This document shows positions 6,721 to 30,960 of a DNA stretch of 40,593 bases, in pieces (position 1 is the first letter of the stretch; the number at the start of each line of letters is the position of its first letter). The notes under the pieces were generated by a model. That model had not been told where the DNA came from. It did not search any database and saw only the letters and a program-made list of their open reading frames with translations. Position numbers and translations under genes: made by a program. This DNA is from Octopus bimaculoides (Eukaryota), in assembly GCF_001194135.2 (NCBI RefSeq), contig NC_069005.1, forward strand, positions 20,654,592-20,695,184. Reading direction: 5' to 3'.

Positions 6721-6746
6721 TGAGATGCATCCTGTTACGTAAATAA

Positions 6747-12304: not shown

Positions 12305-12672
12305 TTGTTGGCACTCCGTCGCTTACGATGTCGAGAGTTCCAGTTGATCCGATCGTGAAATTAACGTACAAGTGGCTGAGCACTCCACAGACACGTGTAC
12401 CCTTAACGTAGTTCTCGGGGATATTCAGCGTGACACAGTGTTACAAGGTTGACCCTTTGAATTACAGGTACAACAGAAACAGGAAGAAAGAGTGAGAGAA
12501 AGTTGGGGTGAAAGAGTACAGCAGGGTTCACCACTGTCCCCTGCCGGAGCCTCGTGGAGCTTTAGGTGTTTTCGCTCAATAAACACTCACAATGCCCGGT
12601 CTAGGAATCGAAACCGCGATCCTATGACTGCAAGTCCGCTGCCTTAACCACTGGGCCATTGCGCCTCCACTC
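12305..12672 (-). mobile_element. Young tRNA-derived SINE (third family) with ~13-bp target-site duplication
   Basis: Head GGCGCAATGGCCCAGTGG (A box), GGTTTCGATTCC (B box); CpGs intact; ACAATATTGTTAG at 12292-12304 and 12673-12685. Confidence 0.85.
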
Positions 12673-12832
12673 ACAATATTGTTAGCTTGGTGTACTAACA
12701 GAGAGCTTATAAAGTATTTTGATAATTCCTCACTAATAACTCACGTGTGTTTGCATGTGTGTGTATGTATAAGGTGGAAAGCCTGTGAGATAACTACACA
12801 ACAAAACAAAAAACTGTTAATGTGTTACTTAC

Positions 12833-13009
12833 AGGATTTGTTATGATGCAGTCAAGAGAATTTACTGTGAAACCATCATATTTGCCAGCGCATACAAGTA
12901 AATCTGGCAAGGGATAGAGCTGCAAGCCACAGTCATAGGCCCAATAAACTGGACATACATGAAGTGGTAGTGGACAGAGGTGACCCTGGGACACTATAGT
13001 TTTAGCAAA
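12833..13009 (-). CDS. POLE2: POLE2 exon 14, [59 protein letters not shown]
   Basis: gattttcag acceptor, GTAAGT donor, 177 nt; signature '[18 protein letters not shown]'. Confidence 0.97.
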
Positions 13010-13299
13010 CTGAAAATCAAGAAAGAAACAATGGTCAGAAATCAGATTATGTATTTACATACGAAGGAAGGAATGTCTCAAGAAATTCTGTCCAACTCAA
13101 ACTTGAAAAAAATGGACATAAAAACTATTATAAAGCTGATTATTATAAAACTATTATAAAGCTGATTATGCAAACACAATAAGACTGAATCAACATCATC
13201 ATCATCATTTTACTTCTACTTTTACATGCTTGTATGAACAGAGTTTACTGCAGCAAATTTTCTATGTCCAGATACCCTGCCTGTTGCCAAGCTATTTCA

Positions 13300-13656
13300 T
13301 TCTGTTTTACTTTTATGGTACACCTATCTTATGTGCATTAAGTTCAACTGATAGATAATTCAGTAATTTGTACAATTCTTCTATATTAAAATTTTGTTGT
13401 AAGCTCATTTTCTATGCTGGTGTTTAAACAAAATTTAAATAATTTTACATTTTGATCAATTTACCTGTAATGAGGTAAAAATTATGAAAAAGACTTGCTT
13501 AAGAGCCTTTTATTAAATTGTGTTTAAAAACAATCACATTTGTATGTTGACAGCTACAAAAGTTAGAGTTGTTTTATTAAACCAGTCTAAATTCACGATT
13601 ATTTAAATGAAACACATAAGGGGTATATTTTGGTTAGAAATATAGTAATGAAAGGG
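13300..13656 (+). mobile_element. Older, degraded right end of the same piggyBac family as 2893-3307 and 27959-29628
   Basis: TTTATGGTACACCT...GGTTAGAAATATAGTAATGAAAGGG|TCAA. Confidence 0.75.
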
Positions 13657-13822
13657 TCAAGAGAACCCTTCACTCCACACAGCCCAAAAAATGGCACATA
13701 GTAAAATTGCATCAACTTAAAGAGTTAGTGCTTTCCTTTATTTTAGATGCCATTTACAAATCAATTCCAATTATAGTCAGCAGAAATGAAGAATAAAAAG
13801 AAGATATGACAGAAATACTTAC

Positions 13823-14006
13823 ATGAGTAGGCACATCGCCAGAGGTAGGAAATCTGATACAACTGCGACAAAGCTTGGTAACAATATCTTCTCGAAAGAC
13901 AACAATCTCTTGTGTACAATATTGGATCCGACAAGGATTGCTGGTGAATATTGCATGAGGGATTTTCTTCCGGAAATATTCTGTGATAGAGTTGGGAATG
14001 GCAGGT
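13823..14006 (-). CDS. POLE2: POLE2 exon 13, PAIPNSITEYFRKKIPHAIFTSNPCRIQYCTQEIVVFREDIVTKLCRSCIRFPTSGDVPTH
   Basis: gatttgcag acceptor, GTAAGT donor, 184 nt; signature 'NPCRIQYCTQEI.VFRED'. Confidence 0.97.
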
Positions 14007-14054
14007 CTGCAAATCAAAGGCAAAGAAATGTAAAAGATTCCATAATGACACAGG

Positions 14055-14395
14055 TTGTGTGGTTAAGAAGCTCACTTTACAAGTATATGGTTGTGGGTTC
14101 AGTCTCACTGTGCAGCATCTTGGGTAAGTGCGTTCTACTAACCCTCAGGTAGGCTAATGCCTTGTGAGTGAATGTGGCAGGCAGAAACTGTATGGAAGCC
14201 TACTGTCACTTGATAACCAGTGTTGGTTTGTTTACATCCCTGTAACATTAGCAGTGTAGCAAGAGGCTAATAGTATGAGTAACAGACTTAGAAATACGTA
14301 TTGTATTCAATTTGCTTGACTAAACACTTCAAGTAGTACCCCAGCATGGTCACAGTCCAATGACCAAAACAAGTAAAAGATAAAAACAAAAAGAA
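14055..14395 (+). mobile_element. tRNA-derived SINE (degenerate)
   Basis: GGTTGTGTGGTTAAGAAG..GGGTTCAGTCTCACTG head and CCCAGCATGGTCACAG..AAGTAAAAGATAAA tail. Confidence 0.7.
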
Positions 14396-14729
14396 AATGA
14401 TAAAAAAAAGAAAGAGAAAAGTTTATTAAACACGGATGTAAGGTATGGTGATACGGCTAAGAAATTCACTTCTCAACCAAGTGGTTCTATGTTTGATCCC
14501 ACTGTGGAGTACCTTGAGTGCTTTCTGCCATAACCTTAGGTGGACTGATATTTTGTGGAATAGAATTTGGTAGAAGGAAGCAATGCAAAAGCCTGTTGCC
14601 TGTGTGTATCAATGTGTTAGAAACATTATGTATTGTTCAGCACCAGGTGGAACATGTGGTCAAACAAAAGCATTGCAGCCACAACCATCACTTCACAGGA
14701 ATACTTCCAACATATATGCCATTATTTAA

Positions 14730-14906
14730 CCCTTTAGCATCTAAACTAGCCATATCCAGTTAAAAAATCTATCCTATGTACAAACTGGCCAGATCCAGCC
14801 TCTCACACCTACCCTACAATGCCATTCCAAAAATAATCACATCACTGAAATTTCAAAGAGACGAGATAAGTATTACATTTGATAAAGTAATCTGAATGCT
14901 AAAATG
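14730..14906 (+). mobile_element. piggyBac-type MITE (~180-210 bp family)
   Basis: TTAA|CCCTTTAGCAT...AATGCTAAAATG|TTAA; same-orientation relatives at 15249-15435, 15907-16120, 16262-16467. Confidence 0.8.
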
Positions 14907-15701
14907 TTAAAACAATACAGGTGTGGTTTGAAAGAAATTTAGCTTCATTTTCTAAAAGGTTGTCCTCATCACCATTTAACGTCCACCTTCCATGCTGGCA
15001 TGGGTTGGACAGTTTGACCGGAACTGACCAGGCAGGAGCCTGCACCAGACTTGTGTGTCTGTTTTTACAGCTGGATGTCCTTCCTTTACAGTGTGGACTG
15101 GATTACTTTATGTAGCATCAACATGCATGCTTGAAAATGAAGAAAATTTATTTAATCAACTGATGTTGGTGTTTTCTAACCTTTTTTTCAAGTAGTACCC
15201 CTGTATGGCTTTGAATATCAAATTATTTTAGTGTTTCTTGTGTTTTAACCATTTAAACCAACCATATCCGGCCCAAATATTCTACTTGTTTTATGTTCAA
15301 ACTGCCAAGATCTGGCCTCTTACACCTACCCTATAATGTCATTGTAAAAATATACAATCACATCATCAAAATCTCAAAACAATGAGATAATGCATAATTA
15401 ATTCAAAATGACGTCAATAAATAAGCATCATATTATGAATATAAGTTACTCATAAACGATGTAAATAAATAAGAAATTGCATTTGATAGCAGCTTATTTC
15501 TTCACATCATTATGTGAATGGTAATAAGAAACTATGCAATTTCTGTCAAATTGCATGACAGAATAATCTGATACTCTATTGTGAATCAATGCTAAGAGTC
15601 AATGATGGGACATTGCTACACAAATTCTATGATGTGTGAAGCTATGTGGCACATTTTTCACAGTATATGGTGTCATTTGATAGAAAGTATGTGATACTTA
15701 C

Positions 15702-15816
15702 CGAGGGAGTATGTTCGTAGGTCCTGGGTCCAATGGACCTGGGACAAATATGAACCTACAACAGTCCTTAAGATTCTGGTATTTACAGATTATATCACAC
15801 AATTCAATAAATGATT
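15702..15816 (-). CDS. POLE2: POLE2 exon 12, (E)SFIELCDIICKYQNLKDCCRFIFVPGPLDPGPTNILP(R)
   Basis: ttttttcag acceptor, GTAAGT donor, 115 nt; signature 'RF.FVPGP.DPG...ILPR'. Confidence 0.95.
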
Positions 15817-15906
15817 CTGAAAAAACAATACAAGATATATTTTTATTATTATTATTGATAATATAATGGAGTGGTGGTAAAAGAGCAAACAGTTGTATTT
15901 CATTAT

Positions 15907-16120
15907 CCTTTTAGCATTCAAACTGACCATATCCAGCCCAAATGTTCTGCTTTATATTCTAACCAACCATATATGGCCTCTCACATCTATCCTACAATAA
16001 TATTCTAAAAATAAAACAATCACATCATTGAAATCTCAAGGCTATGAGATAATGCATGATTAATTCAAAATAATATGAATCTACAAATATATTTGAAAGA
16101 ATCATCTGAATGCTAAAGGG
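15907..16120 (+). mobile_element. piggyBac-type MITE copy
   Basis: CCTTTTAGCATTCAAAC...TGAATGCTAAAGGG termini; body shared with 14730 copy. Confidence 0.8.
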
Positions 16121-17475
16121 TTATATTTATCTTGAGTTCAAATCCTGCTATGATCAAATATACAGCCAAAATATTCTACCAGCTTTGTGTTCATATTAAC
16201 CAGATCCAGACTATCACACCTACCCTTGCCATGATCAAATTTACTTTCATTCATCACCATCAACTTTTTAACATTTAAATAGGCCATTTCTGGCCAAAAT
16301 AATCCGATCAGCCAAATCCAGCCTCTCACACTTATCTGACAATGTGATTCTAAAAATATACAATCACATCACTGAAATCTCAAAGTTACGAGATAAAGCA
16401 TGATTAATTCAAAACAATGTAAGTGAATAAGTATTACATTTGACGAAGTAATCTAAATGCTAAAGGATTAAGTAAGCTTGTTGCCACTTTAAGATTCGCT
16501 GATGAGGTCTAATAAGATAGAAACATGTCAGCAAGTGAATTTCTTAACCACTTGTTGTCCAATTTAGACATGTATTTATCTATTATATGTATATATGTAA
16601 GAAGTAAAAGAGATAAGTCCAGGCAGATATGTATAAAGCACTTAGTGTTAAACCAATTTGGTTAACTATATCAGGCAACTGGACACCGATAAATGCAAGT
16701 AGAATAAACATCCAAGGTAATTCCTCATGAACGACAAGGAAATCCAAACACACAGCTCTCTTTATATATTTCATGTTATGCTTAAAAGTAATGTATGTTA
16801 CCAGAATTGTCTGGCTTGAGTAGAACAAACCACTCCAAATCCTTTTTAGAGTATTCATGTAAATGAAGGACTGATCAGCCCATACTGGCATAGAGTCATA
16901 TAACAATAAAGCCAGGCCAAGTAATGATATTTTGAATGCATTTAATACATAGATATTATACACATTATGCAATAGGTAAAAAGGAATTCCTTATTTACAC
17001 AATATATTTCTGAGTTAAGACATTTCAAAATATAAACAGTACGATAGAATTTGCCTTTTATATATGGTCTTCAACAGTTTAAATCATCTATTAGTTGAGG
17101 GGAGGATGTAGCCAGAAGGGGTGAAATATCTATAGAAAGGGAGTGATATGTAGACATGAGATAAAAAGAAACATGAGGTGAAACTAAATCAGAGAAGAAA
17201 ATAAGAATAAGGATTAACAAAATAAAATAGAAACATTGAAAGCATGGAATTTTTAAAAGAAAAGCCTTAAACTGAAGATATGTAAGAGATGAATTCCCTT
17301 TTTATCTATTGCATAATGATCTGAAACATACATATTAAATGTATTCAAAATATCATTCCTTGATTTGACTATTATTATACATACATAGAAAGATATATAT
17401 TTCAATCAACAATCAGTGTTCATGTATTAGCATATCTGTGCCACAGATGCAAGGCTGAAAAAGACTATATATTAC

Positions 17476-17596
17476 CTCGAAGTATTTTGGTGTGATTGGC
17501 CTGGTGACACAGCGACGTGAAGTTACCACAAAAAACAAATGCAACAGGGGGGTGTTCAGAATAACCACTAAACAACACCTTTAATTTGTCAACCAC
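17476..17596 (-). CDS. POLE2: POLE2 exon 11, VVDKLKVLFSGYSEHPPVAFVFCGNFTSLCHQANHTKILR
   Basis: ttttag acceptor, GTAATA donor, 121 nt; signature 'PP..F..CGNF'. Confidence 0.95.
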
Positions 17597-18089
17597 CTAA
17601 AAGACAAAAATAAATAAATAACAATTTCTAACATAAGTACAAGGATCTAAATTTTGGAGGTACGGATATAAACAATTAGACTAACACCAGAATAGGATTG
17701 CTCTTTTAGTAAATCACAACAGCATTTCACTTCAGAAAGGAAGTGAATGCAACAATTTAGCCCACTACTTTATTAATTTGTCAATACAGTTAATTCTGTC
17801 ATTCTTCCTGTAACATTTTATTTTTTATCTTTTACTTATTTCAGTCATTGGACTGCAGCCTTGTGCAGGCATCATCATCAAAGGTTTAGCAGAAAGAAAC
17901 GGCCACACTACTTATTGTCCTTAAGGTCATTATTAATTTAGTCTCTTTTGCCAATCGGATAAGATACGGGAATATAAACAAACCAACACCAGTTGTCAAG
18001 TGGTGGTACAACAAACACACAAATACCCATGTACATATATACAAATACAATGTGATGCAGATGGATGAGGACAGTTTATAAAAGTACCA

Positions 18090-18440
18090 ATCGCTTAAAG
18101 TGAAAGCAAGTTGTGGAAGATGGAGACCCAAGAAGACATGGAACGAAGTACTGAAGGCCAATTTCTAAATGAACTTTACAAAGGAGATAACAGAGGACCA
18201 AGATACCTGGTGCAATGCTGTACTCAAGAAGACCTGCCAACCACAACAGAATTGAGATCCTAAAACCAAGACGCCACATAGAAAGCACAGGTGCTGGTGT
18301 CACATATTAGGAAGAGCATCCAGCCATAGAAAACAAACTAAAACAGAGTATGGAACCTGGTGTGGCCCCTGGCCATACCAGTTCCTGTCGAGCTGTCCAA
18401 TTCATGCCAGCATGGAAAACAGGTATTAAATGATAATGAT
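18090..18440 (+). mobile_element. RTE LINE 3' end fragment
   Basis: Decayed 'CGR.RPKKTW.EV' coding tail followed by CCAGCATGGAAAAC..TAAATGATAATGATGAT tail. Confidence 0.65.
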
Positions 18441-18544
18441 GATGTATATATTGCATAGAGTCAAAAGTTGTGCAACATTTTGGTAACGTATTTACTTTCT
18501 TTGTTAAGTTACAACAAAAGCAACTTAGCATTCAAAGTAGAGTG

Positions 18545-18650
18545 TTGCACCATCTGAAGCCATCTTTCTGCCAGAACTTTGATCTCATTCTGATGCCAGT
18601 TCTTGTTCAAGGTGAAGAACTCCACCACTGCTGCTTCCACTGAAAAGCAT
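18545..18650 (-). mobile_element. mariner transposase C-terminal fragment
   Basis: Minus strand VEAAVVEFFTLNKNWHQNEIKVLAERWLQMVQH resembles the mariner 'FF.SK...Y..GI..L..RW' tail. Confidence 0.6.
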
Positions 18651-19266
18651 TATTAAAGAGGACAGACTTAAATACCATTGGTTTCCACATCAATTTCACA
18701 ACTTGACTAAAATTTATATATTCCAAAGATCAGCCCTTCACTCTAGCACCTTTAACCAGGTGGCACCATCATCATTTTCACATCCACACAAGGGTTTGAT
18801 AGAATATACTAAGGCAAATTTCATATGGCCAAATGCCATCCTGTTGCCAACCCTGATATGTTTCTGAGGAAAGTAATATTTCCCCATAACCAGACATGTT
18901 TTCATTGAAGATTGGAAACAAAGGACACTGCTTGTATGACAGTGACACTCATTTACAACTATCACGTGAAGTCAAGACAAGGAGACAGTCACACACATAA
19001 TATACACATACACAATGGTATTCTTTCAATTTCCACCTACCAAATCTATTCACAAGGCTTTGAATAGCCCAGGGCTATAACAGACACTTGTCCAAGGTGT
19101 CATGCAGTGGGACTGAACCTAAAACCATGTGGTCGAAAAGCAAACTGTTACCATATAACTACACCTGCAAATTTTAAAAAGTAAACCAAAGAGAGTCTTT
19201 ATGGGATTGCTAACCTTGCAAGAAATAGCATCCAAATTTTCCTTCAAATCACAATCTTATCGTTAA

Positions 19267-19450
19267 CCCTTTAGCACTGAGATTACTCTGTCAAATGTTA
19301 TATCTATTCATTCACATTGTTGTGAATTAATCATGCATTTTGGTGGTGTGATTGTTTCATTTTCAGAATGCTGTGAGAGGCTGGACCATGCAAGTCAGAG
19401 CATAAAACAGAATACACGGGCTGAATTTGGATGATTTGAATGCTGAAGGG
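19267..19450 (-). mobile_element. piggyBac-type MITE, inverted relative to the 14.7-16.5 kb copies
   Basis: TTAA|CCCTTTAGCACTGAGATTACTCTGTCAAATG...AATGCTGAAGGG|TTAA; begins with the reverse complement of the other copies' 3' end. Confidence 0.8.
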
Positions 19451-19633
19451 TTAAAAAGATGACACACTGAAATGCTTTTTATTTCATATATATATATGTA
19501 TATATCTATATATATTTCAGTGAGAATGGTTTTGTTATACAGCACCGTATTTTACAATCCTGTAAATAATAATAAAGATATTTTTATATAAGCTTAGAGT
19601 TTATGGCGTTCACTGTTGGGGTTGTATACTTAC

Positions 19634-19775
19634 TTTGGGCTCATCTAACCAAACGTCAGACAGAAAGACAAACATGGACTCTTGATTTTCAACTTCAAGG
19701 TGACGCAGTTTGTCTGAAGCCTTAGCACAAGTTTTGAGAGGACCTCCAAAGAAGTTAATGTTGCCAAAATAGGAC
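19634..19775 (-). CDS. POLE2: POLE2 exon 10, [47 protein letters not shown]
   Basis: ccttgcag acceptor, GTAAGT donor, 142 nt; signature '[11 protein letters not shown]'. Confidence 0.97.
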
Positions 19776-20059
19776 CTGCAAGGTCAGAAGGTCAGAGTAT
19801 GAAAGAAATGGAAAGGGTGGGGAGGAGAAAAAGAAAAACATTACACAGGTTATAATGCCGCAATAGGTATTTCGTCATACTGCAGCAGTCCTACAAATAA
19901 AGAAAGGCATTTCTTTGAAACACAGAGGTGTGGAAATGTGATTCAGAAACTTGCCACCCAACAATCTGGTCCGAGTTTCAGTCCAACTAGACCCAGGTTG
20001 ACCAAAGCATTGTGAATGAATTTAGTAGACACAAACTTAGAGAAACTTGACACACACAT

Positions 20060-20223
20060 ACATGGCTGTGTGATAAGAAGCTTGCTTCCCAACCACATGA
20101 CACCAGGTTCAGTCCCACTGCATGGCACCTGGAGCAAGTGTCTTCTAATATAACCTTGGGTTGACTAAAGCCTTGTGAGTGGATTTGGTAGACGGAAACT
20201 GAAAGAAGCCCATCGTGTGTGTT

Positions 20224-20269
<46 letters not shown>

Positions 20270-20430
20270 TNNNNNNNNNNGTTTATGTTCCCCTAACATA
20301 GCGGTTCGGCAAAATAAACCGATAGAATAAGTACTAGGCTTACAAAGAATAAGTCCTGGGAGTCGATTCGCTCGACTAAAGGCGGTGCTCCAGCATGGCC
20401 ACAGTCAAATGACTGAAACAAGTAAAAGAT
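20060..20430 (+). mobile_element. tRNA-derived SINE with (GT)n middle
   Basis: CATGGCTGTGTG..GGTTCAGTCCCACTG head; GGCGGTGCTCCAGCATGGCC tail; 10-N gap inside. Confidence 0.85.
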
Positions 20431-21139
20431 ATATATATCTATATATATATATACATATATATGTTAAGAGGGTAAAGACCCCCTTCAGTCATGAATGACC
20501 CTAGGATTGTACCTAGAAATGGCACCCTGTGAAGCACAAGTCCAGGCAAGGTTGTTTATGGAAGACCAGCAGTCGCCCATGCATGCCAGCCTCCCCTCCG
20601 CACACCACCAGTGTTATCCAAGTGAAAAGCAAAGGCTAATACAGCTTTGCACCAGGGGTGACGTCACAACTCATTTCTATAGATACATGAACTGGGACAA
20701 AGTGAAATAAAGTGTCTTGCTCAAGAACACAACATACAGCTCAGTCCAAGAACCAAACTCACTGTGTGTGTCTGTCTGTCTGTCTCCCACCACTACTTGG
20801 CAACCAGTGTTGGTGTGTTTACATCCCTAGAACCTAGCAGACTGGCAAAAGAGAACAATAGAATAAGTACCAGTCTTAAAAAAAGTACCGGGGTTGATTC
20901 ATTCGACTAATAACTCTCCAAGGTGGTGCCCCGGCATGGCCGCAGTCTCACGACTTAAACAAGTAAAAGATAAAGTGATATGCATGTGTGTGTAGCCTAG
21001 TCTTGACATCATGTGATGGTTGTAAACAAACCTCAGTCTTACAAGTGGTATCTTTCAAGAACACCATGTCAGGCCATGGAGAAAGGTCACTTTATTTGGA
21101 AACTGTTAGGTGGGAAGTAGCATGTGGCTGGACACATCA

Positions 21140-21510
21140 TATCTTTTACTTGTTTCAGTCATTAGACTACGGCCATGCTAGAGCACCACTTTGAAGAATT
21201 TTTAGTCAAATGAATCGACCCCAGTATTTTTTTTCTAAAGCCTGGTACTTATTTTATTGGTCTCTTTTACTAAACCAATAAGTTACAGGGATGTAAACAC
21301 ACCAACCTAGGTTGTCAAGTGGTGGTGGGAGGGGACAAACACAGACAGAAAGACACAAAACAGATTTCTTTCAGTTTCCGTCTACCAAATCCACTGACAA
21401 GGTTTTGGTCTGCCCAAAGCTACAGAAGACACTTGCCCAAGGTGCCACACAGGACTGAACTCCAAACCATGTGGTTGGGAAACATGCTTCTTACCACACA
21501 GCCATACCTG
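21140..21510 (-). mobile_element. tRNA-derived SINE, inverted
   Basis: Reverse complement of the 20060/36376 family across head and tail. Confidence 0.8.
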
Positions 21511-21840
21511 TGCCTGCACTTAGGATTACATTCTTTACCTCATTATACATCAATATATCTCATTGTAATGCAGTATATTGTGGAGGCATGGTTTGTCCCT
21601 CAATTACTACAAAAAAAAAAAGAAAAAAAATTGTGCAGGATGCATCAATGCAGTATTGTAATGCACCACAAATTCCCATTGCATCAACACCATAAGACAT
21701 CATTGTACTGGGCACTGTGGCACAATCCAAAAGCATTAAGGAAAACTACCAACACCATGTAGTTTCAGCAACACTTCACACTGCAGTGTGGCATATACCT
21801 GCAATTATTGACCAAACAAAAATGTTATAAAGTGATTTAC

Positions 21841-21962
21841 CTGGTAACAGAGGCAGGTTCAGGTGGTGGGAAGCCAAATGCCGTCACATGGAAGATGCTG
21901 TCTTCATACCAACCTTCAGCTAGTACAAAGCAGTTTTCAGTGAAAAGTCCAGTATGGAAACT
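21841..21962 (-). CDS. POLE2: POLE2 exon 9, [40 protein letters not shown](R)
   Basis: AC acceptor, AG|GTAAAT donor, 122 nt; near-identical to '[17 protein letters not shown]'. Confidence 0.95.
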
Positions 21963-22656
21963 GTAGCACAAGTTAAAGAAACTTACAGAAAGTTTGGATT
22001 CAAACTTGAAAGTCATAATGAGAGGCAAGAGACGAAACAATGAAAGCATGAGCATGTGTGTCACAGGTTCAGTTCTGTAACACACGTAGTTCAAAAACTA
22101 TAAATAATATGAAGAGAAAATTAAAATAAGAAACAAAGTATTAAGTTTATACTCAGGAAATAGAAATTAGAAGGAAAAGTGTGTTTGAAGCACAATCTCT
22201 TCCTCTGAAAGAACAGGCAAGGAGAGAGAAAGAGAGAAAAGAAAAAGAGAACGTGAAACAATCATGGCAATCTGAAGAGGTCGCCCTGGATGTGAGTGAC
22301 ATGAGGTGGGGGCACAACCAAGTAGATGCCCTCTTTCAGTATACATATACATTAGAAAGATATGCAGAAAATCACACTCCACTGGCAAGAGAGGTCATAG
22401 GTGAACACTACAGCGAAGAGCAGATAACCTATTGACATCTTCCTCTCCAAATATATTTGGGTGTTAATTTTACTTTCCTGCCTTTTAATAGGTTTGCTTT
22501 TAACCATGCTGGATCCCACACATTCTTCACACTCAGTACATTGGATAGGAATTAACAACTTATTCAACAACCACAAGATAGGCTGTACCAAGTTAGATGA
22601 CACAAGTAGGTACAACCTCATATTACATTAAAACAAGTCAAAAACAAAAAGGATAT
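21963..22656 (-). other. U12-type (minor spliceosome) AT-AC intron, POLE2 intron 8 (694 nt)
   Basis: 5' end ATATCCTTTTTG at 22656; branch-like TTTCTTTAAC at 21981-21972; intron ends TTGTGCTAC; joining gives in-frame IDLTGA|SFHTG. Confidence 0.9.
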
Positions 22657-22713
22657 TGCTCCGGTGAGATCAATAAGGACTGAGCCACTTGGGTCTTCAA
22701 GGTACCATTTCCC
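22657..22713 (-). CDS. POLE2: POLE2 exon 8, GKWYLEDPSGSVLIDLTGA
   Basis: atttcag acceptor, 57 nt; followed by ATATCCTTT (U12-type donor); conserved 'GK..LEDP.G.V..DL'. Confidence 0.93.
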
Positions 22714-23258
22714 CTGAAATATTACAAAGAAATAAATTTGATTCACTAGTGTATCCAATATCAATTGACAGCAAATGTTTATATTTGCTTCATAGTATAT
22801 AAAAAAGAACTAGTTTTCAGTGCATACAGATATTTTTAAAAATCTGGAATTTAAGGCATCAGAAATCCATATTAATACTCATGTGTCAGAAACATGTTCA
22901 ACCACAACTGAACTGAGATCTTAAAACCAAGGTACCATGTAAAAAGCATTGGTGTGGGTGCTGGTGCCACATAAAAACGCACCCAGTACACTCTGTAAAG
23001 TGGTTGTCATTAAGAAGGGAATCCAACCGTAGAAAACAAGGCAAAACAATGAAACTTGCTGTGGCCCCGGCCAGGTCCTGCCAAGTTAACCCATACCAGC
23101 ATGGAAAACGGATGTTTAATATTGATGATGAAAGGTATGATTAGTAAAACAAAAACATAATAGTTTACAATACACATTTAAAATTTTTAACTTTAGCAGT
23201 TTAGTTTCACTGTCAAAGTGAAGCACGTTGATAATCTATTTCCAATGTGCCACAAAAA

Positions 23259-23620
23259 TCATCATCATCATTCATCATCGTTTAACGTCCGCTTTCTATG
23301 CTAGCATGGGTTGGACGATTTGACTGAGGACTGGTGAAACCAGATGGCTACACCAGGCTCCAATCTGATCTGGCAGAGTTTCTACAGCTGGACGCCCTTC
23401 CTAACACCAACCACTCAGAGTGTAATGGGTGTGTTTACGTGCCACCGGCACGAAGGCCAGTCAGGTGGTACTGGCAACGGCCATGCTCAAAATGGTATAT
23501 TTTATGTGCCACCTGCACAGGAGCCAGTTTGGCGGCACTGGCAACAATCTCGCTCGAATGTCTTTACACATGCCATCCAGCACAAGTGCCAGGGAGGCGA
23601 TGCTGGGCACAGGTGCCGAC
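23259..23620 (-). mobile_element. RTE-type 3' tail with GGCACTGGCAAC-like internal repeats
   Basis: Reverse complement of 3336-3490 plus extension. Confidence 0.75.
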
Positions 23621-24074
23621 CAAGATTGAAATATAGCAAACAAGGCACAAACACATCAATAGTAATCTCCCTTAGAATAACGTGAAATGTTTCCAAATTG
23701 GATTGGATTGCCCAAGTTCAGTCAACTACAGAACAAGGACTTCATCATGTTTTCTCCACCAGCGATAATGACTTGAGATCATATGGATTTGATGAGCCTA
23801 CTTTGCCACAGCAGTTTGTTTACTAATACCCAGGAGTAGTTAAGTTGATTATACTGACCTCAGTGCACAACTAGTATTTATTTTATCGGTGAACTGGCAG
23901 AATCATTTGCACACCAGGCAAAGTGCTTAGTGGTATTTTGTCTGTCTTTATGTTCTGAGATCAAATTCTGCCATGGTCAACTTAGCCTTTCATATTTTTG
24001 GGGCCAATAAAAAAAGTATTACTGTATATAAATAATATATATTCCATGGATTGTACATTGATATATAAAGGATA

Positions 24075-24397
24075 AAAAAAACCCTCCAGCCATGAATGAC
24101 AATGGGACTGCACCTAGAAAGTTCCCTTCCAAGGAACAAGTCCGGGCAAGGTTGACTATGGAAAACCAGCAGTCACCCATGCATACCAGCCTCCCCTCTC
24201 CAAGCCACTGATGTTATCCAAGGGAAAGGCAAAGGCCAATACAGCTCGGCACCAGTGATGTTGCAGCTCATTTCTACAGATGAGTGAACTGGGGCAACAG
24301 GAAATAAACTGTCTTGCTCAAGAACTCAACACACAGCCCAATCAGGGAATCAAACTACATCATGATTTTGATCCTGATGCTCTAACCACTGAGCCAA
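24075..24397 (-). mobile_element. tRNA-derived SINE (fourth family); related copy at about 20465-20765
   Basis: tRNA-like head at right end (rc GGCTCAGTGGTTAGAGCA..GTTTGATTCC); shared body CACCTAGAAA..GAAGACCAGCAGTC. Confidence 0.7.
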
Positions 24398-25433
24398 TAA
24401 ACAAATAAATATATATATATACATATATATATAACTACTAAGACTGTGAGTTGGCAGAATGCCTAGCGGTATTTCAACCGTCTTTATGTCCTGAGTTCAA
24501 ATTCCACCAAGGAAAACTGCCTTTCATCCTTTCAGGGGTTGATAAAATAAGTGCTAGTTGAACACTGGGGTCAATGTAATTGACTTAACCCCTCCCCATA
24601 TGAATACTAATTTTCAAAACAAAATCTTATTACCTTAAAATCAAACAAATTTCTCACTTTTATAACTCCTCTCATGACTAACCATTCACTCTCTTGCCTC
24701 TTCTTCCTCTGTGTGTAGCATTGCTTTTCTCCTTGCCTAGCACCAAGCCTAGTATATGCACTCATCCTGCCCCTCTTATGTTTAACTCTCCCTTCTTTCT
24801 ATACGATACAAAGCATAACTGGAGAAACCAGCCAACCAACAAAAATTAATATCAGCTAATATACAGAGATTCTAAAAGCACTGAGCTGGCAGAATCGTTA
24901 GCTTGCCGAGCAAAATGCTTAGCGGCATTTCATTTATTTTTACATTCTGAGCTCAAATTCTGCCAAGATTGACTTTGCCTTTTATCCTTTTTGGGTTGAT
25001 AAAACACGTAACAGCTGAGCACTGGGATTGACGTAATCGACTTAACCCCTTCACACTCAAGTGATCAGCATTAAGAAGGGCATCCAGCTGTAAGAACCAT
25101 GCCAAAACAACTGGAGTCTGGACAGCTCCCCAACTGGCCAACTCCTGTCAAACCGTCCAACCCATGCCAACATGGAAAATGGATGATAAACGATGAAGAT
25201 ATGTAAAAGATAGCCAACACACGCAAGTAAATTTGTAAACAAAGATTTGTGTGAGTAGGTTAGCTTTGTTCCCCACCCACTTGACAACTGGTGTTATTTT
25301 GTCTATGCCCCTGTGACTAAGTGGTTTGATATCAATTTGTTTGACTAAACCCTTCAAGGGTGTCCAAGTGTGGCTGCAGCAAAGAAGAGATAAAGGATAA
25401 AATGAAAAATGTTATAAACAAAAAATTACAAAC

Positions 25434-25517
25434 CTCTTTCAGCTGTGTTAGCATCCCAAGAACAATGAGTTCTCCAACTTTAGATGTTGTACCCAGCAGG
25501 TGCTCAATCGGTTTCAG
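25434..25517 (-). CDS. POLE2: POLE2 exon 7, LKPIEHLLGTTSKVGELIVLGMLTQLKE
   Basis: ccttcctag acceptor, GTTTGT donor, 84 nt; conserved 'LK.IE.LLG...IVLGM.TQLKE'. Confidence 0.95.
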
Positions 25518-26412
25518 CTAGGGAAGGGGAAATACAAAAAGATGTTAAATATTCATTAACACATTTGTTACATATTGTTTAATAATTCCAAGAAATAAAA
25601 CCCTAACTTGGTGTTTGGACCTGAATCAACCAAAATCCAACAGAAATATGATGAAAGGCATTTCAGTTATTACTATGCAAAGTTTTTTTTCAGGAAAACA
25701 TCTTTTTTAACCAAGGTGCAACATAAAAAGCATTGGTGTGGGTGGTGGTGCCACATGAAAAGCACTTGGCACTGGTGGCAGTGCCACGAGAGAGGCACCA
25801 GTGGCAGTGTTGTGCTTAATACACTAGGCACTGGTGGTGATGTCACGTGAAAAGCACTACAAGCAGTGCCACATGAAAAGCACTCAGTACACTCTGAAAA
25901 GTGGTTGGCATTGGGAAGGGTATCCAGCTGTAGAAATCAAGCCAAGATAGACTATGGAACCTAGTGCAGTCCCTTGTCTTACCAATTCCTTTCAAGCTGG
26001 CCAAACCATACTAGCATGGAAAACAGACATTAAATGTTGTCGGGGACGATCCTTCGAAGACATTTGAGTGACCACTTATAGATTCCCTAATTAGATTGAT
26101 GGCTCCTTAATTTTCTTACAAAACAGGAAATTTTTCAAATATAAATGATGTGGCCCAATGGACAGGGACCCTTTGTAGATTTAAAGACCACCAATGAATT
26201 AAATCAAGCTTCGTGAAACCTTTTAATATCAACCCAGCCAAAACTCCCTGTTTGAAGTGATCAAAAGCTTCCATTAGAATTCTATGCTAATTTATGTTCC
26301 AAACATCAGTTTAATAACGACAAAGTTATTTTACTAAATTCTTTATAACATATCTAGGTCTGCTGAACCAAGTCTGACTTGTAGCTAACAAGAATTCAAA
26401 CAACAAACGTAC

Positions 26413-26484
26413 CTGAAATTTTTGAGAATTTTCATCCATGTTTCTAATGGCTGGTGGTGTAAATAGATGGTGGCGCATAGTTCT
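26413..26484 (-). CDS. POLE2: POLE2 exon 6, RTMRHHLFTPPAIRNMDENSQKFQ
   Basis: cttcag acceptor, GTACGT donor, 72 nt; conserved 'RT.RH.LFTPP'. Confidence 0.95.
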
Positions 26485-27050
26485 CTGAAGAATATTAGAA
26501 AGAAAGAAGGGGTTAAGCATATGAGCAGAAAGTAGTGACGAGGAACCTTGGTGAAAAAATAGGGGTTAACACTGCTTTGTCTACTTCACACAAAATCTGG
26601 TGAACATGTGGTAACTTCCTCAATCAATCTATTAGCTCGCCTGATACCAAATATGTAGTGAGTGCAAAGCAAACAGATAAGAGAAGCAGTGAGGTGGACA
26701 GGGGTGGTTTGTGTTACTTATGGGATTGGTGGTTTAATATATAGTAGCTTTGTAAAGGTACAAACACATGGAAAGATATAAGACCCAGAAGGCATAGGAA
26801 CCCCAACAATATATATATATATATATATATACAGAGAGAGAGAATGGCAATACTTGATATGCAACAGACTTCATCAAACCCTTGCCTTAGCAGATAACCT
26901 ATTGACACCTTCCTCTCCAAATATATTTGGGCGTTAATTTACAGTGTATATGAGCTCATAATGTCCCACATTATATTTATACACCTGTCCATTTCTCCTG
27001 TGTAGCAGTTTCTAACAAGGAAATGATGAAATCTAAAGTTAAGGACTCAC

Positions 27051-27144
27051 CTGATAGAGTAACATATAACGATCCTTAAACAATTTCCAGAGGTCAGCTG
27101 GTTGTCCATGAAGTAGAGGTGGTGACAAGCCAAGTTCTTCGTTT
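27051..27144 (-). CDS. POLE2: POLE2 exon 5, NEELGLSPPLLHGQPADLWKLFKDRYMLLYQ
   Basis: aaacag acceptor, GTGAGT donor, 94 nt; aligns to 'LFGTPRDKAEMFRERYTILHQ'. Confidence 0.92.
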
Positions 27145-27958
27145 CTGTTTATGAAATATAAAAACATCACTTAACACCAACTTTTCCATGCTTGTATGCG
27201 TCAGATAGATCACAAAGCGAATTTCCTATGGCCGGACGCCCATCTTGTCACCAACCCTCACCCGTTTCCAAGCAAGGTGATATATCACATGGCCACACGT
27301 TTTTCAGAAACGAATAATGCTTGTAAACAGTGATACAACTATCAGGTGTCAAGACAGGAGAAGGCGCACACACAGATCTACCTATCATTCCGACCCCAAC
27401 CAAACCCCTTCTATCCCCTCATTCTCCTTAAATCATTTTTTCACACCATTTTCACTGATTACCTCCTTTCTGTGCCTTTGGTTATCTTCCCCACTCCTCT
27501 GCCATATTTCAACACCTCACATTCTCAACACCCTCTCAAAGCTACCATCACATCCCACTTGCTCTAGCCACTTATGTATTACTACATCTCCCTCCCCACC
27601 ACTCCTACACCTTGCACATCATCACCCCACTTCCTGATTTGGTATTTGCCATCAACTGCACCTGCATTTTTGTTCATCACTCACTAGATTGATCTCTCCC
27701 TCACACACCTAAACATGTCACATCTTGTACCTTAGGGATTTGCTCTGACACTCCATCACTTCCATCTTATTTTTCCCAGCTACTCCTAACATTATATAAT
27801 GCAGGGTGGCCATGTTATCTCTCCTGTAGGAAGATACTTGTGCTTGTCCATCCATTACACTTTAGCTTCTCAACACCTGACATAAAACCACTGCCCCTCA
27901 ATTACTTCCCCTACTACCACAATTAATTGGGGGAGGGGGATTTCCTTTCCTGATTTAA

Positions 27959-29628
27959 CCCTTTCGTTACCAAACCGCCCAAAGCCGCCCGAAAAAATTT
28001 TTTGTTCATGTGACCAAGCCGCCCAAAACCGCCCGTAATCACCTATTCATATTTAAATGAGAATATCTGAGCAAATCTCTTTAGTACATTCGTGAAAACA
28101 CGTGATTATTTGTGTAAACAGTTCAGCTATAGTTTTGTACGACGATCAACGTGTTTTTTTAATTTTGTGAATTTTGGGAGATTTTTTTCCAAATTTGTTC
28201 CTGTTGTGTTTTCAAAATTTGTAATCCTGACAAAAAAATGGATACGAATTTTATTCTGTCAAGCAGCGAGTCAGAATTCGAAGGATTTTCCGTTGAAGAC
28301 CTTGATAANNNNNNNNNNNNNNNNNNNNNNNNNNNNNNNNNNNNNNNNNNNNNNNNNNNNNNNNNNNNNNNNNNNNNNNNNNNNNNNNNNNNNNNNNNNN
28401 NNNNNNNNNNNNNNNNNNNNNNNNNNNNNNNNNNNNNNNNNNNNNNNNNNNNNNNNNNNNNNNNNNNNNNNNNNNNNNNNNNNNNNNNNNNNNNNNNNNN
28501 NNNNNNNNNNNNNNNNNNNNNNNNNNNNNNNNNNNNNNNNNNNNNNNNNNNNNNNNNNNNNNNNNNNNNNNNNNNNNNNNNNNNNNNNNNNNNNNNNNNN
28601 NNNNNNNNNNNNNNNNNNNNNNNNNNNNNNNNNNNNNNNNNNNNNNNNNNNNNNNNNNNNNNNNNNNNNNNNNNNNNNNNNNNNNNNNNNNNNNNNNNNN
28701 NNNNNNNNNNNNNNNNNNNNNNNNNNNNNNNNNNNNNNNNNNNNNNNNNNNNNNNNNNNNNNNNNNNNNNNNNNNNNNNNNNNNNNNNNNNNNNNNNNNN
28801 NNNNNNNNNNNNNNNNNNNNNNNNNNNNNNNNNNNNNNNNNNNNNNNNNNNNNNNNNNNNNNNNNNNNNNNNNNNNNNNNNNNNNNNNNNNNNNNNNNNN
28901 NNNNNNNNNNNNNNNNNNNNNNNNNNNNNNNNNNNNNNNNNNNNNNNNNNNNNNNNNNNNNNNNNNNNNNNNNNNNNNNNNNNNNNNNNNNNNNNNNNNN
29001 NNNNNNNNNNNNNNNNNNNNNNNNNNNNNNNNNNNNNNNNNNNNNNNNNNNNNNNNNNNNNNNNNNNNNNNNNNNNNNNNNNNNNNNNNNNNNNNNNNNN
29101 NNNNNNNNNNNNNNNNNNNNNNNNNNNNNNNNNNNNNNNNNNNNNNNNNNNNNNNNNNNNNNNNNNNNNNNNNNNNNNNNNNNNNNNNNNNNNNNNNNNN
29201 NNNNNNNNNNNNNNNNNNNNNNNNNNNNNNNNNNACTGGGTACTGCTCTGGATTTTAATGTTATACTGACAAAAGAGACAGTAATAAATCCAGTAATGTG
29301 CACGACTCTTCTATAATAATATTTTGTTGTATACCCAATTGAATATTAGCTAATAACCCATTTTCTATAGCGATGTTTGAACAAAAATTTTAATAATTTT
29401 ATATTTTGTTGAATTTACCTGTAATTAAAGTCACTTTGTGACAAAAATTTTGGTATAGAATTGGTTGAGAACCTTTCGTGAATTTATCTTCCAAAAATCA
29501 CATTAATATGTTGATAAATAAAAAAGTTAGAGTTGTTTAACGAAACCAGCCTAAATTTATGATTATGTTAGAAATTAATTGAAACACATAAGGGGTGTAA
29601 TTTGGTTAGAAATATGGTAACGAAAGGG
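27959..29628 (+). mobile_element. piggyBac element with both termini intact, interior mostly in an N-gap
   Basis: TTAA|CCCTTTCGTTACCA...TGGTAACGAAAGGG|TTAA (14-bp TIR); four (A/G)CCGCCC subterminal repeats; ORF start MDTNFILSSSESEFEGF at 28238. Confidence 0.9.
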
Positions 29629-29973
29629 TTAAAGTTAGTTGGTGACCTCACTAGTACCAGTGGCATGAGAAAAGCACCCAGTATGCATTGTAAAATGGTT
29701 GGCATAAGAAAAGGCATCCAGCTATGGAAACAATGCCCAAGCCGATATTGGAGCTTGACACAGCCTTATGGCTCATGGGATTCCAATAAACTATCCAAAC
29801 CATGCCAGTATAGAAAATGGATGTTAACTGATGCTATAGGCTTCTTTCAGTTTCCATCTATCAAATCCACTAACAAGGCTTTGGTTGGCCTGAGGCTATA
29901 GAAGACATTTGCCCAGGATGCCCCACAGTGGGACCGAACCTGATTGGGAAGCAAACTTCTTAATCTAGCTAAA

Positions 29974-30010
<37 letters not shown>

Positions 30011-30480
30011 CAATTAACATATGAGTATATATTATATATACGTACATACCTACATCAACATGTATATATAGATGCATATCTAGGTACAGGACATAGCAAA
30101 AAAACGTGGACAAAATGATAAACTGAGTACAGAAAACACACAGGCCACATAGAGAACATTTCCTTCATCAAACAATCATTAAACTTCCATGTTCCACTGC
30201 CATGTAGCATAGCTGTACATATACAGGCATCTGACTTACACCCTCCCCACAAAAATTGCAGGCCAAAATGTGAAATCATTAAATTAATGTCTGAAACATA
30301 AATTATCATGAAGTCTTAATAGAAAGCTTTTATTTAAATCATTTTAAAAGAGGAAGTTTGTATCATAGAACCAAGGGTGTTTTGAGAGGGTTGATACTGA
30401 AGGCTTTAAAGGTGAACAAGATCAATCCAGGAAAAAAAAAAAAAAAAAAAAAAAAGCAGCAAACTTTAAGGATAACTTAC

Positions 30481-30558
30481 AAAATGAATTTTTTCCGTTC
30501 TTCAGCATAAGTGTATCTTGGCACTGAAAACGCATCAATCACACTAAAGGCATTTTCT
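30481..30558 (-). CDS. POLE2: POLE2 exon 4, ENAFSVIDAFSVPRYTYAEERKKFI(L)
   Basis: gatttcag acceptor, GTAAGT donor, 78 nt; conserved 'AF.IPRF.Y..ERKKF'. Confidence 0.95.
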
Positions 30559-30794
30559 CTGAAATCAAACAACAAATATTTTAAATAACAAAGATGGTCA
30601 GGACTAAAGAGCTATGTTCTATTTCAAATCTCAAAGTTGGTAACGAGATTAAGTTTCCAAGTAATAACAAATGTGTCGTTACATCAAGATTTACCTTGCC
30701 AGGTACAGCTGTCAACTCTCATTTAGTCCTCTTTTCAGTAGATTTCTAATGACTCGACTGTTGAAAATGTTTCCATTAATTTGAGGAATTTTCA

Positions 30795-30960
30795 GCACAG
30801 ACATGGCTGTGTGGTTAACAAGCTTACTTCCCAACCGCATGATTTTGAGTTCAGTCCCACTGCATGGCACCTTGGGCAAGTATCTTCTACTATAGCCTCA
30901 AGTCAACCAACTTGTGAGTGGATTTGGTAGACAGAAATTGAAAGAAGCCTGTAGTAGATG
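30795..30960 (+). mobile_element. tRNA-derived SINE head
   Basis: CATGGCTGTGTGG..GAGTTCAGTCCCACTG..GTGAGTGGATTTGGTAGAC. Confidence 0.75.

What the first reader, a model, noticed from the sequence alone, without database searches (positions are those of the whole stretch)
21963..22656. AT-AC minor-spliceosome intron in POLE2, with a decoy AG two bases downstream
Seen: no GT donor follows exon 8 at the homologous position. Instead there is ATATCCTTT, a TTTCTTTAAC branch-like motif 9 nt before the end, and a terminal AC. Only AT-AC splicing gives the colinear IDLTGA|SFHTG (human LDLSKA|QFHSG, recalled). The next two bases are AG, so GT-AG-only predictors would shift the frame or split the gene. 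The other 13 introns are GT-AG. Established: U12 introns are rare and can be rate-limiting. I recall vertebrate POLE2 being listed as a minor-intron gene, which would make this intron ancient; that is unverified.
Basis: partly seen in the sequence, partly recalled or inferred. Interest (0 to 1): 0.7.

Follow-up and report, generated by a model that had tools for sequence, protein, structure and literature searches.

The report
Conserved AT-AC minor intron in octopus POLE2
The stretch is a genuine AT-AC intron of the rare "minor spliceosome" kind in the octopus gene for the second subunit of DNA polymerase epsilon. It sits at exactly the same codon as in mouse and sea cucumber, is already used in the RefSeq gene model, and is therefore correct but ordinary.

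Summary
The window is Octopus bimaculoides. Its minus strand carries a complete 15-exon, 522-aa POLE2 gene (39646-10498). Intron 8 (22656-21963, 694 nt) begins ATATCCTTT, has TTTCTTTAAC ending 9 nt before the end, and ends AC. The other 13 introns are GT-AG.

Only the AT-AC junction gives a product that aligns without a gap to human POLE2 (PDB 5vbn_A, E=5e-204). That product is identical to RefSeq XP_052832716.1.

Introns at the same codon and phase have U12-type signals in Argonauta, mouse, sea cucumber and five unidentified invertebrate contigs. Two of these have switched to the GT-AG U12 subtype. A sponge has a U2-type intron there, and a jellyfish gene has no introns. The MIDB paper lists human and mouse POLE2 as minor-intron genes.

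The warning about GT-AG-only predictors is borne out. An older O. bimaculoides model, an O. vulgaris model that uses the decoy AG, and a split sea cucumber gene all fail at this intron.

Verdict: a real U12-type AT-AC intron of bilaterian age, already annotated and of a well-known kind. It has low novelty but is useful as an annotation check. No octopus RNA evidence was available.

The parts
10498..39646 (-). POLE2 (DNA polymerase epsilon subunit 2) coding region: 15 exons, 522 aa, ATG at 39646, stop codon at 10500-10498
   Evidence: Gene model. Pfam Dpoe2NT and DNA_pol_E_B. Aligns end to end with human POLE2, PDB 5vbn_A, E=5e-204. Exact identity to RefSeq XP_052832716.1 / XP_014778687.1 of Octopus bimaculoides.
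22657..22713 (-). Exon 8 (57 nt, GKWYLEDPSGSVLIDLTGA), phase 0 at both ends
21963..22656 (-). Intron 8, 694 nt, U12-type of the AT-AC subtype
22648..22656 (-). U12-type 5' splice site ATATCCTTT, a perfect match to RTATCCTTT. The first 11 nt, ATATCCTTTTT, are identical in Argonauta.
21972..21981 (-). Branch-site motif TTTCTTTAAC. Its core TCTTTAAC has one mismatch to TCCTTAAC. The candidate branch adenosines at 21974 and 21973 lie 11 and 10 nt from the last intron base.
   Evidence: The spacing optimum of 11-13 nt is from PMC3584512.
21963..21964 (-). Terminal AC of the intron (3' splice site)
21961..21962 (-). 'Decoy' AG, the first two bases of exon 9 (Ser codon AGT). Using it as the acceptor with the AT donor shifts the frame (FPYWTFH*).
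   Evidence: The O. vulgaris model CAI9740654.1 uses it. Argonauta also has AC|AGC.
21841..21962 (-). Exon 9 (122 nt, [40 protein letters not shown]+R)
22618..22620 (-). In-frame TGA reached if intron 8 is retained (…TGA-ISFLFLTCFNVI*). A retained transcript therefore encodes a truncated protein.
22704..22705 (-). Cryptic GT inside exon 8 (TG|GTACCT). Paired with the decoy AG it gives an in-frame product lacking 17 conserved residues (GK-C-FHTG). This is an annotation trap.
   Evidence: It matches the O. vulgaris model.
22005..22006 (-). Cryptic AG inside the intron (CTTTCAAG|TTTGAA). The older O. bimaculoides model uses it, skips exon 8 and reads [14 protein letters not shown] from intron sequence.

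Best explanation
Window 22656-21963 (minus strand) is intron 8 of Octopus bimaculoides POLE2. It is a U12-type intron of the AT-AC subtype, removed by the minor spliceosome.

Inferred mechanism, from established knowledge of U12 splicing:
- U11 snRNA, and later U6atac, pairs with the rigid 5' splice site ATATCCTTT.
- U12 snRNA pairs with TCTTTAAC. The single departure from the consensus (C to U) would turn a C-G pair into a U-G wobble. One of the two adenosines (21974 or 21973) bulges out as the branch point.
- The 3' splice site is then chosen by its short distance from the branch (10-11 nt), at the AC. This joins GCA (Ala209) to AGT (Ser210) in phase 0.

The intron is orthologous to the annotated minor intron of mouse and human POLE2 and dates at least to the bilaterian ancestor. 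If it is retained, translation stops after 12 intronic codons. Slow minor splicing could therefore limit POLE2 output, as proposed for U12 introns in general.

Shown here: the signals, the colinearity, the orthology and the annotation failures. Inferred: dependence on the minor spliceosome and any rate-limiting role in octopus.
For: Sequence signals:
- The 5' splice site matches the U12 consensus at 8/8 positions and GTAAGT at 2/6. All 13 other introns score 4-6/6 for U2 and at most 4/8 for U12.
- The branch-site motif has one mismatch and lies 10 nt (11 for the other A) from the end. The reported optimum is 11-13 nt, and the 5' splice site plus branch site are the defining features of the class (PMC3584512).
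- The joint chance of both signals at fixed boundaries is about 1e-7.

Colinearity:
- Among all in-frame, stop-free AT-AC, GT-AG and GC-AG combinations near the two exons, only 22657|21962 gives a gap-free match to orthologues.
- The product equals RefSeq XP_052832716.1 exactly and is 98% identical to the O. sinensis protein.

Same codon and same phase in other loci:
- Argonauta hians: ATATCCTTT...CCCTTGAC...CAC.
- Mus musculus: ATATCCTTT...TCCTTGAG...TAC, 715 nt.
- Apostichopus japonicus: ATATCCTTT...TCCTTGAC...TAC.
- Five metagenome-derived invertebrate loci, including two of the GT-AG U12 subtype (GTATCCTTT, GTATCTTTT).

Conservation and literature:
- Between octopus and Argonauta only the exons and the first ~15 intron bases are conserved.
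- Human and mouse POLE2 are listed as minor-intron genes with these very sequences (PMC6717393 supplement).
- Mouse Pole2 is named among genes with affected U12 introns in Zrsr1/2 mutants (PMC7312986).
- Most orthologues of human minor introns in molluscs are also minor (PMC11347168).
Against: - No octopus RNA data could be examined, so the junction rests on colinearity, orthology and a RefSeq prediction.
- The branch motif has one mismatch. The 10-nt spacing is at the short edge of the reported optimum.
- The AG two bases further on lies 12-13 nt from the branch, so some AT-AG mis-splicing cannot be excluded. Selection of U12 3' splice sites is described as error-prone (PMC3584512).
- Absence of a polypyrimidine tract could not be judged in this AT-rich genome.
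- Presence of U11, U12, U4atac and U6atac in this species was not tested here.
Confidence: 0.95

Rival explanations
1. It is a U2-dependent AT-AC intron, the rare class removed by the major spliceosome despite AT-AC ends, as in some sodium-channel genes.
For: The AT-AC ends alone do not define the U12 type (PMC3584512). U2-type AT-AC introns exist (PMC2831892).
Against: Described U2-type AT-AC introns carry G at +5 (PMC2831892), whereas this one has C at +5 within a perfect ATATCCTTT. A U12-type branch motif sits 10-11 nt from the 3' end. The orthologous mouse and human intron is catalogued as minor.
Confidence: 0.02
2. The real mRNA uses GT-AG sites as in other public models. Either the cryptic GT in exon 8 joins to the decoy AG (O. 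vulgaris CAI9740654.1), or exon 8 is skipped and an AG inside the intron is used (UniRef A0A0L8GRI8).
For: Both solutions are in frame and free of stops. Both exist as deposited protein models.
Against: They delete 17-19 residues that are conserved from sponge to human (WYLEDPSGxVxxDL), or replace them with intron-derived sequence that has no homologue. The donors are weak (GTACCT). The U12 signals are conserved at the colinear boundary in nine other loci. RefSeq models of O. bimaculoides, O. sinensis and Argonauta are colinear.
Confidence: 0.02
3. The AT and AC ends are an assembly or sequencing artefact of a draft scaffold (the window has four runs of N), and the true intron is GT-AG.
For: The window is a gapped draft, with N runs at 2171-2270, 20271-20280, 28309-29234 and 38636-39102.
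Against: Two independent errors would be needed at both ends, together with a perfect 9-nt U12 donor. The same AT...AC ends occur in Argonauta, mouse, sea cucumber and three metagenome loci. No gap lies within 1.6 kb of the intron.
Confidence: 0.01

Closest known systems
Minor (U12-type) intron of mouse Pole2 / human POLE2, as listed in the Minor Intron Database paper (Olthof et al. 2019, PMC6717393)
   Same: Same gene, same codon boundary (…A|Q/S-FH…), same phase 0 and same AT-AC subtype. The same 5' splice site is preceded by an Ala codon. The length class is similar: 694 nt in octopus, 715 nt in mouse, 432 nt in human.
   Different: The branch motif differs in sequence and spacing: octopus TCTTTAAC at 10 nt, mouse TCCTTGAG at 23 nt. 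The first exon codon is Ser AGT in octopus, which creates an AG right after the AC. Mouse has Gln CAG, whose AG lies in frame 3 nt downstream.
Classical AT-AC U12-type introns in general (5' ATATCCTTT, branch site TCCTTAAC, 3' YAC), reviewed by Turunen et al. 2013 (PMC3584512)
   Same: All sequence hallmarks are present. The host gene belongs to the 'information processing' class (DNA replication) in which U12 introns are enriched.
   Different: Nothing essential: one C-to-T change in the branch motif, and spacing at the short edge of the optimum.
GT-AG subtype U12 introns and U2-type introns at orthologous positions (subtype switch and type conversion; Burge et al. 1998, as summarised in PMC2831892)
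   Same: The POLE2 position shows several of these states. AT-AC occurs in octopods, mouse, sea cucumber and loci L001, L003 and L008. GT-AG U12 occurs in L005 and L006. A U2-type GTAAGT...CAG intron occurs in the sponge Oscarella. No intron is present at this site in L010/L011, and the jellyfish Rhopilema gene is entirely intronless.
   Different: The octopus intron itself is the AT-AC state. The direction of change in the sponge (U12 to U2, or an ancestral U2) is not resolved here.
U2-dependent AT-AC introns
   Same: AT-AC ends.
   Different: Those introns have G at +5 (PMC2831892). This one has the U12 donor and branch motif.

Membership tests
U12-type (minor spliceosome) intron | Highly conserved 5' splice site /RTATCCTTT | tested here: met
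   ATATCCTTT at 22656-22648, 8/8 to the consensus after the first base. The other 13 introns score at most 4/8.
U12-type (minor spliceosome) intron | Branch-point sequence resembling TCCTTAAC close to the 3' end (optimum 11-13 nt; PMC3584512) | tested here: met
   TCTTTAAC at 21979-21972 has one mismatch, and its branch A lies 10-11 nt from the last intron base. Only 0.3-0.4% of background 40-mers from this window do as well.
U12-type (minor spliceosome) intron | Terminal dinucleotides AT-AC or GT-AG | tested here: met
   AT at 22656-22655 and AC at 21964-21963.
U12-type (minor spliceosome) intron | No distinct polypyrimidine tract upstream of the 3' splice site | tested here: inconclusive
   The pyrimidine fraction at -25..-4 is 0.64, compared with 0.59-0.91 for the 13 U2-type introns. 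The longest pyrimidine run is the branch motif itself. The genome is AT-rich, so the measure does not discriminate.
U12-type (minor spliceosome) intron | Orthologous introns at the same position are U12-type in other species | tested here: met
   Argonauta, mouse, sea cucumber and five further loci carry U12 signals at the same codon and phase. Mouse and human are catalogued as minor.
U12-type (minor spliceosome) intron | Removal depends on U11, U12, U4atac and U6atac snRNPs | not testable with these tools
   This needs RNA or biochemical experiments. For mouse, Pole2 is named among genes with affected U12 introns in Zrsr1/2 mutants (PMC7312986).
U12-type (minor spliceosome) intron | The organism has a minor spliceosome | not tested
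   The snRNA genes are not in this window; Rfam found nothing in it. The literature reports minor introns in Octopus sinensis and enrichment in molluscs (PMC10639083).
POLE2 / Dpb2 (DNA polymerase epsilon subunit 2) | Dpoe2NT N-terminal domain plus DNA_pol_E_B domain, colinear with solved POLE2 | tested here: met
   PF12213 at E=5.5e-20 and PF04042 at E=4e-46. Residues 5-521 of 522 align with 5vbn_A (E=5e-204), and the yeast Dpb2 chains match at about 2e-46.
U2-dependent AT-AC intron | AT-AC ends with a U2-like donor (G at +5) and no U12 branch motif | tested here: not met
   Position +5 is C, the donor is the U12 consensus, and a U12 branch motif is present. The criterion is from PMC2831892.

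The most novel reading that the evidence does not exclude
In octopods the first codon of exon 9 is Ser AGY (AGT in Octopus, AGC in Argonauta). An AG therefore sits 12-13 nt from the branch point, inside the optimal window for a U12 3' splice site. The minor spliceosome might use this AG part of the time (AT-AG), giving a -2 frameshift and an early stop. Together with intron retention (a stop after 12 codons), this would form a built-in unproductive-splicing valve on POLE2 output in proliferating tissue.
Probability: 0.07. Interest if true: 0.4.

Novelty: already known. Interest (0 to 1): 0.2.

Why it matters
The biology is expected. DNA-replication genes are a classic home of U12 introns, and molluscs keep most of the minor introns that humans have. 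This intron adds a clean and well-placed example but no new principle.

Its practical value is in annotation. At this one intron, three public gene models are wrong in three different ways:
- exon 8 is skipped and intron sequence is translated (O. bimaculoides, UniRef A0A0L8GRI8);
- 17 conserved residues are deleted through a cryptic GT and the decoy AG (O. vulgaris, CAI9740654.1);
- the gene is split (Apostichopus japonicus, GCA_002754855.1).

A scan for RTATCCTTT at places where colinearity with orthologues breaks down would catch such errors. The POLE2 position also shows, within one gene, the AT-AC U12, GT-AG U12, U2-type and intron-absent states of the evolutionary series proposed for U12 introns.

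Tried and rejected
The resulting model was then validated independently by Pfam, PDB and exact RefSeq identity.
Its identity was obtained through the listing of cluster members instead.
- Second ATATCCTTT at 6510-6518 (minus strand): it lies antisense inside a degraded piggyBac transposase remnant, with no exon homology around it, so I treat it as chance.
- Bare motif: it is not enriched in the window. The significance comes from its position.
- Rfam at gathering threshold found nothing in the window, so no snRNA, snoRNA or miRNA lies in or near the intron.
- The polypyrimidine-tract criterion was uninformative.
- Locus L009 has a diverged exon 9 (NFDRG, EGPYED), no detectable exon 8 and a poor branch motif. 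It may be a pseudogene or too diverged, so I left it out of the comparison.
- The taxa of the metagenome loci could only be approximated. L006 is nearest oysters, L008 nearest a gastropod, L001 and L003 look lophotrochozoan-like, and L005 is unclear.
- Supplements of PMC11347168 and PMC10639083 held no per-gene octopus table. Zhu & Brendel 2003 is not in the library. Conservation beyond animals therefore could not be checked.
- Cluster member P0147 ('Pelagibacter' protein, 54 aa) shows no obvious similarity to POLE2 by eye (not aligned). I treat it as a clustering artefact.

Full report
**Observation**

Read on the minus strand, the region shows an exon ending ...ATT GAT CTC ACC GGA GCA at 22657. 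It is followed at once by ATATCCTTTTTG. There is no GT at or next to the boundary.

Near the other end the sequence is ...TTTCTGTAAGTTTCTTTAACTTGTGCTAC|AGTTTCCATACTGGA. TTTCTTTAAC occupies 21981-21972. Nine bases follow it, the intron ends AC at 21964-21963, and the next two bases are AG.

Translation from 21962 gives [40 protein letters not shown]. Translation from 21960, that is after the AG, gives FPYWTFH*.

**Gene model**

I located the exons with a human POLE2 sequence recalled from memory, used only as a tblastn probe. I then fixed each boundary by reading the splice sites. Exon 3, which the probe missed, came from an enumeration of AG...GT intervals in the right phase.

The result is 15 exons, a 1569-nt reading frame and 522 aa, with the ATG at 39646 and the stop codon ending at 10498. 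Thirteen introns are GT-AG, and intron 8 (22656-21963, 694 nt) is AT-AC.

The model was validated without reference to the probe:
- Pfam finds Dpoe2NT and DNA_pol_E_B.
- The protein aligns over residues 5-521 with human POLE2 of PDB 5vbn_A (E=5e-204). There is no gap at ...dltga|sfhtg... against ...dlska|qfhsg....
- The exact 522-aa sequence is RefSeq XP_052832716.1 / XP_014778687.1, DNA polymerase epsilon subunit 2 isoform X1 of Octopus bimaculoides.

The window is therefore O. bimaculoides, and RefSeq already uses this junction. The O. sinensis protein is 98% identical and the Argonauta hians protein 81% identical. Both are colinear across the junction.

**Is it more than chance?**

RTATCCTTT is not enriched in the window as a bare motif (2 found, 1.04 expected). 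The second copy (6510-6518, minus strand) lies antisense in a transposon remnant.

Position is what counts:
- With the window's base composition, the chance of RTATCCTTT at one fixed base is about 2e-5.
- Only 0.3-0.4% of background 40-mers carry a branch motif with at most one mismatch to TCCTTAAC at 8-20 nt from their end.
- Intron 8 scores 8/8 for the U12 donor and 2/6 for GTAAGT. The other 13 introns score 4-6/6 for GTAAGT and at most 4/8 for the U12 donor.

**Alternatives at the junction**

I enumerated every AT-AC, GT-AG and GC-AG pair around the two exons that stays in frame without a stop. In-frame GT-AG solutions do exist:
- TG|GTACCT in exon 8 joined to the decoy AG gives GK-C-FHTG and loses 17 residues.
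- A very poor GTTTTT donor joined to the decoy AG adds ISFF.
- A GTAATA donor joined to an internal AG adds 24 residues.

None is colinear with orthologues. Only 22657|21962 is.

**Orthologous loci**

ORF fragments from public assemblies read from the intron into the exon 9 homologue, and several end ...Y|NFHTG, that is TAC before the exon. I fetched the DNA and placed the exon 8 and exon 9 homologues. At the same codon and in phase 0 I found:

| Locus | 5' end | Branch motif and 3' end | Length |
|---|---|---|---|
| Argonauta hians | ATATCCTTTTTA | CCCTTGAC...CTCAC | 871 nt |
| Mus musculus | ATATCCTTT | TCCTTGAG...GTAC | 715 nt |
| Apostichopus japonicus | ATATCCTTT | TCCTTGAC...CTAC | 840 nt |
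| L001/L002 | ATATCCTTT | TCCTTGAC...ATAC | 340 nt |
| L003/L004 | ATATCCTTT | TCCTTAAG...GTAC | 261 nt |
| L008 | ATATCCTTT | GCCTTGAC...GGAC | 4879 nt |
| L006 | GTATCCTTT | ATCTTAAC...TCAG | 131 nt |
| L005 | GTATCTTTT | TCTTTAAC...GCAG | 1196 nt |

L005 and L006 are the GT-AG subtype of U12 introns. Other states also occur:
- The sponge Oscarella lobularis has a 52-nt U2-type intron (GTAAGT...TTCAG) at the same position.
- The jellyfish Rhopilema esculentum gene has no introns at all.
- Loci L010/L011 read straight through this position.

Between Octopus and Argonauta only the exons and the first ~15 intron bases align. The branch motif has moved.

**Literature**

- Supplement file 3 of Olthof et al. 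2019 lists Pole2/POLE2 as a minor-intron gene in both species. Mouse has 5' splice site GCT|ATATCCTTT and branch site ATATCCTTGAGT; human has GCT|ATATCCTTC and TTTTCCTCAACT. The lengths are 715 and 432 nt (PMC6717393). The mouse strings and length equal what I read in locus L013.
- Pole2 is named among genes with affected U12 introns in Zrsr1/2 mutant mouse embryos (PMC7312986).
- The review by Turunen et al. gives the defining features (5' splice site and branch site) and the 11-13 nt spacing optimum. It also reports that AT-AG combinations are disfavoured, that 3' splice site choice is error-prone, and that U12 introns are enriched in DNA replication and repair genes (PMC3584512).
- Subtype switching and U12-to-U2 conversion are described in PMC2831892.
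- Most orthologues of human minor introns in molluscs are also minor (PMC11347168).
- Molluscs are relatively rich in minor introns, and Octopus sinensis was among the species compared (PMC10639083).

**Mechanism**

Shown here: a perfect U12 donor, a near-consensus branch motif at U12 spacing, AT-AC ends, colinearity only with this junction, and orthology to catalogued minor introns.

Inferred from established knowledge of the minor spliceosome:
- U11, and then U6atac, pairs with ATATCCTTT.
- U12 pairs with TCTTTAAC. The C-to-U change would replace a C-G pair by a U-G wobble, and one adenosine (21974 or 21973) bulges out.
- The AC 10-11 nt downstream is taken as the 3' splice site.

Retention of the intron would end translation at the TGA at 22620-22618, after 12 intronic codons. 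Slow splicing could therefore lower POLE2 output. That this happens in octopus is not shown.

**The decoy AG**

The AG is the start of the Ser codon AGT; Argonauta has AGC. As a trap for software it is real:
- The O. vulgaris protein CAI9740654.1 reads ...LKEGK-C-FHTG..., exactly the cryptic-GT plus decoy-AG solution.
- The older O. bimaculoides model, UniRef A0A0L8GRI8, skips exon 8 and reads [14 protein letters not shown] from the last 42 intron bases.
- The GenBank annotation of Apostichopus japonicus GCA_002754855.1 breaks POLE2 into separate genes, with a boundary at this intron (genes 659-7388 and 8001-9395 in L007, intron 7374-8213).

Whether the minor spliceosome itself ever uses the AG, which lies 12-13 nt from the branch, cannot be told without RNA data.

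**Verdict**

The observation and the interpretation are both correct. The intron is a member of a well-known class. It is orthologous to a catalogued vertebrate minor intron, it is at least bilaterian in age, and it is already incorporated in RefSeq. Novelty is low. The practical point is that this intron is a reproducible cause of wrong gene models.

Noticed in passing
window 7397-7786 (+): A 129-aa ORF matches Pfam Parvo_NS1 (PF01057, E=4e-12, profile positions 108-217 of 271). This looks like a short endogenous parvovirus/densovirus-like NS1 helicase fragment about 2.7 kb beyond the POLE2 stop codon. Neighbouring ORFs gave no viral hits, so it appears to be an isolated, degraded fragment.
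   Followed up: partly
window 5039-6601 (+): A degraded, frameshifted piggyBac-like transposase. Pfam DDE_Tnp_1_7 matches two overlapping ORFs (E=2e-33 and 2e-8). The window's second ATATCCTTT (6510-6518, minus strand) lies antisense inside it and appears to be a chance match.
   Followed up: yes
window 28238-28308 (+), next to the N gap 28309-29234 in POLE2 intron 4: An ORF start, MDTNFILSSSESEFEGFSVEDLD, resembles the N-terminus of the ORF at 5039 upstream of the piggyBac-like transposase remnant (…SDSDFEGFTINDTE…). It runs into an assembly gap, so a second copy of that element may be hidden there.
   Followed up: no
window ~33940-34290 (-), in POLE2 intron 2; also 4275-4676 (+): Translations such as ...CWYGHVMHTDENSCVKK...GRPRRTWDVVVKNDLQTL... 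and ...NRKPWISDETWQKVEERK... look like fragments of non-LTR retrotransposon ORF2. This is a resemblance from memory; Pfam gave no hit for the 4275 ORF.
   Followed up: partly
window 35974-35991 (-), in POLE2 intron 1: ATGGACTCTATCAAAAACAG|GTAGTG encodes MDSIKN. This is the alternative first coding exon of RefSeq isoform X2 (XP_052832717.1, 507 aa).
   Followed up: partly
window 22419-22470 (intron 8) and 26889-26940 (intron 5), minus strand: A 52-nt segment of intron 8 is 96% identical to a segment of intron 5, probably a short interspersed repeat.
   Followed up: no
window 2171-2270, 20271-20280, 28309-29234, 38636-39102: Four runs of N (assembly gaps) explain the very low GC values in the composition profile. 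None is near intron 8.
   Followed up: yes
L014 2475-2526 (Oscarella lobularis); L015 501-2069 (Rhopilema esculentum): The sponge has a 52-nt U2-type intron (GTAAGT...TTCAG) at exactly the POLE2 minor-intron position. The jellyfish POLE2 gene is a single uninterrupted 522-codon ORF, so it is either a retrogene replacement or has lost all its introns.
   Followed up: partly
L007 659-9395 (Apostichopus japonicus MRZV01000059.1): The GenBank annotation splits POLE2 into several genes, with one break at the AT-AC intron. The 95-aa 'partial' protein begins with a spurious MLKYMSPWATVR in place of the start of exon 9. A later RefSeq model of the same species (521 aa) aligns with the octopus protein over the octopus protein's full length.
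   Followed up: yes
L009 4479-6087: This POLE2-like locus from a metagenome assembly has a diverged exon 9 (NFDRG, EGPYED, ACGFPPP) and no detectable exon 8. It may be a pseudogene or a fast-evolving copy.
   Followed up: no
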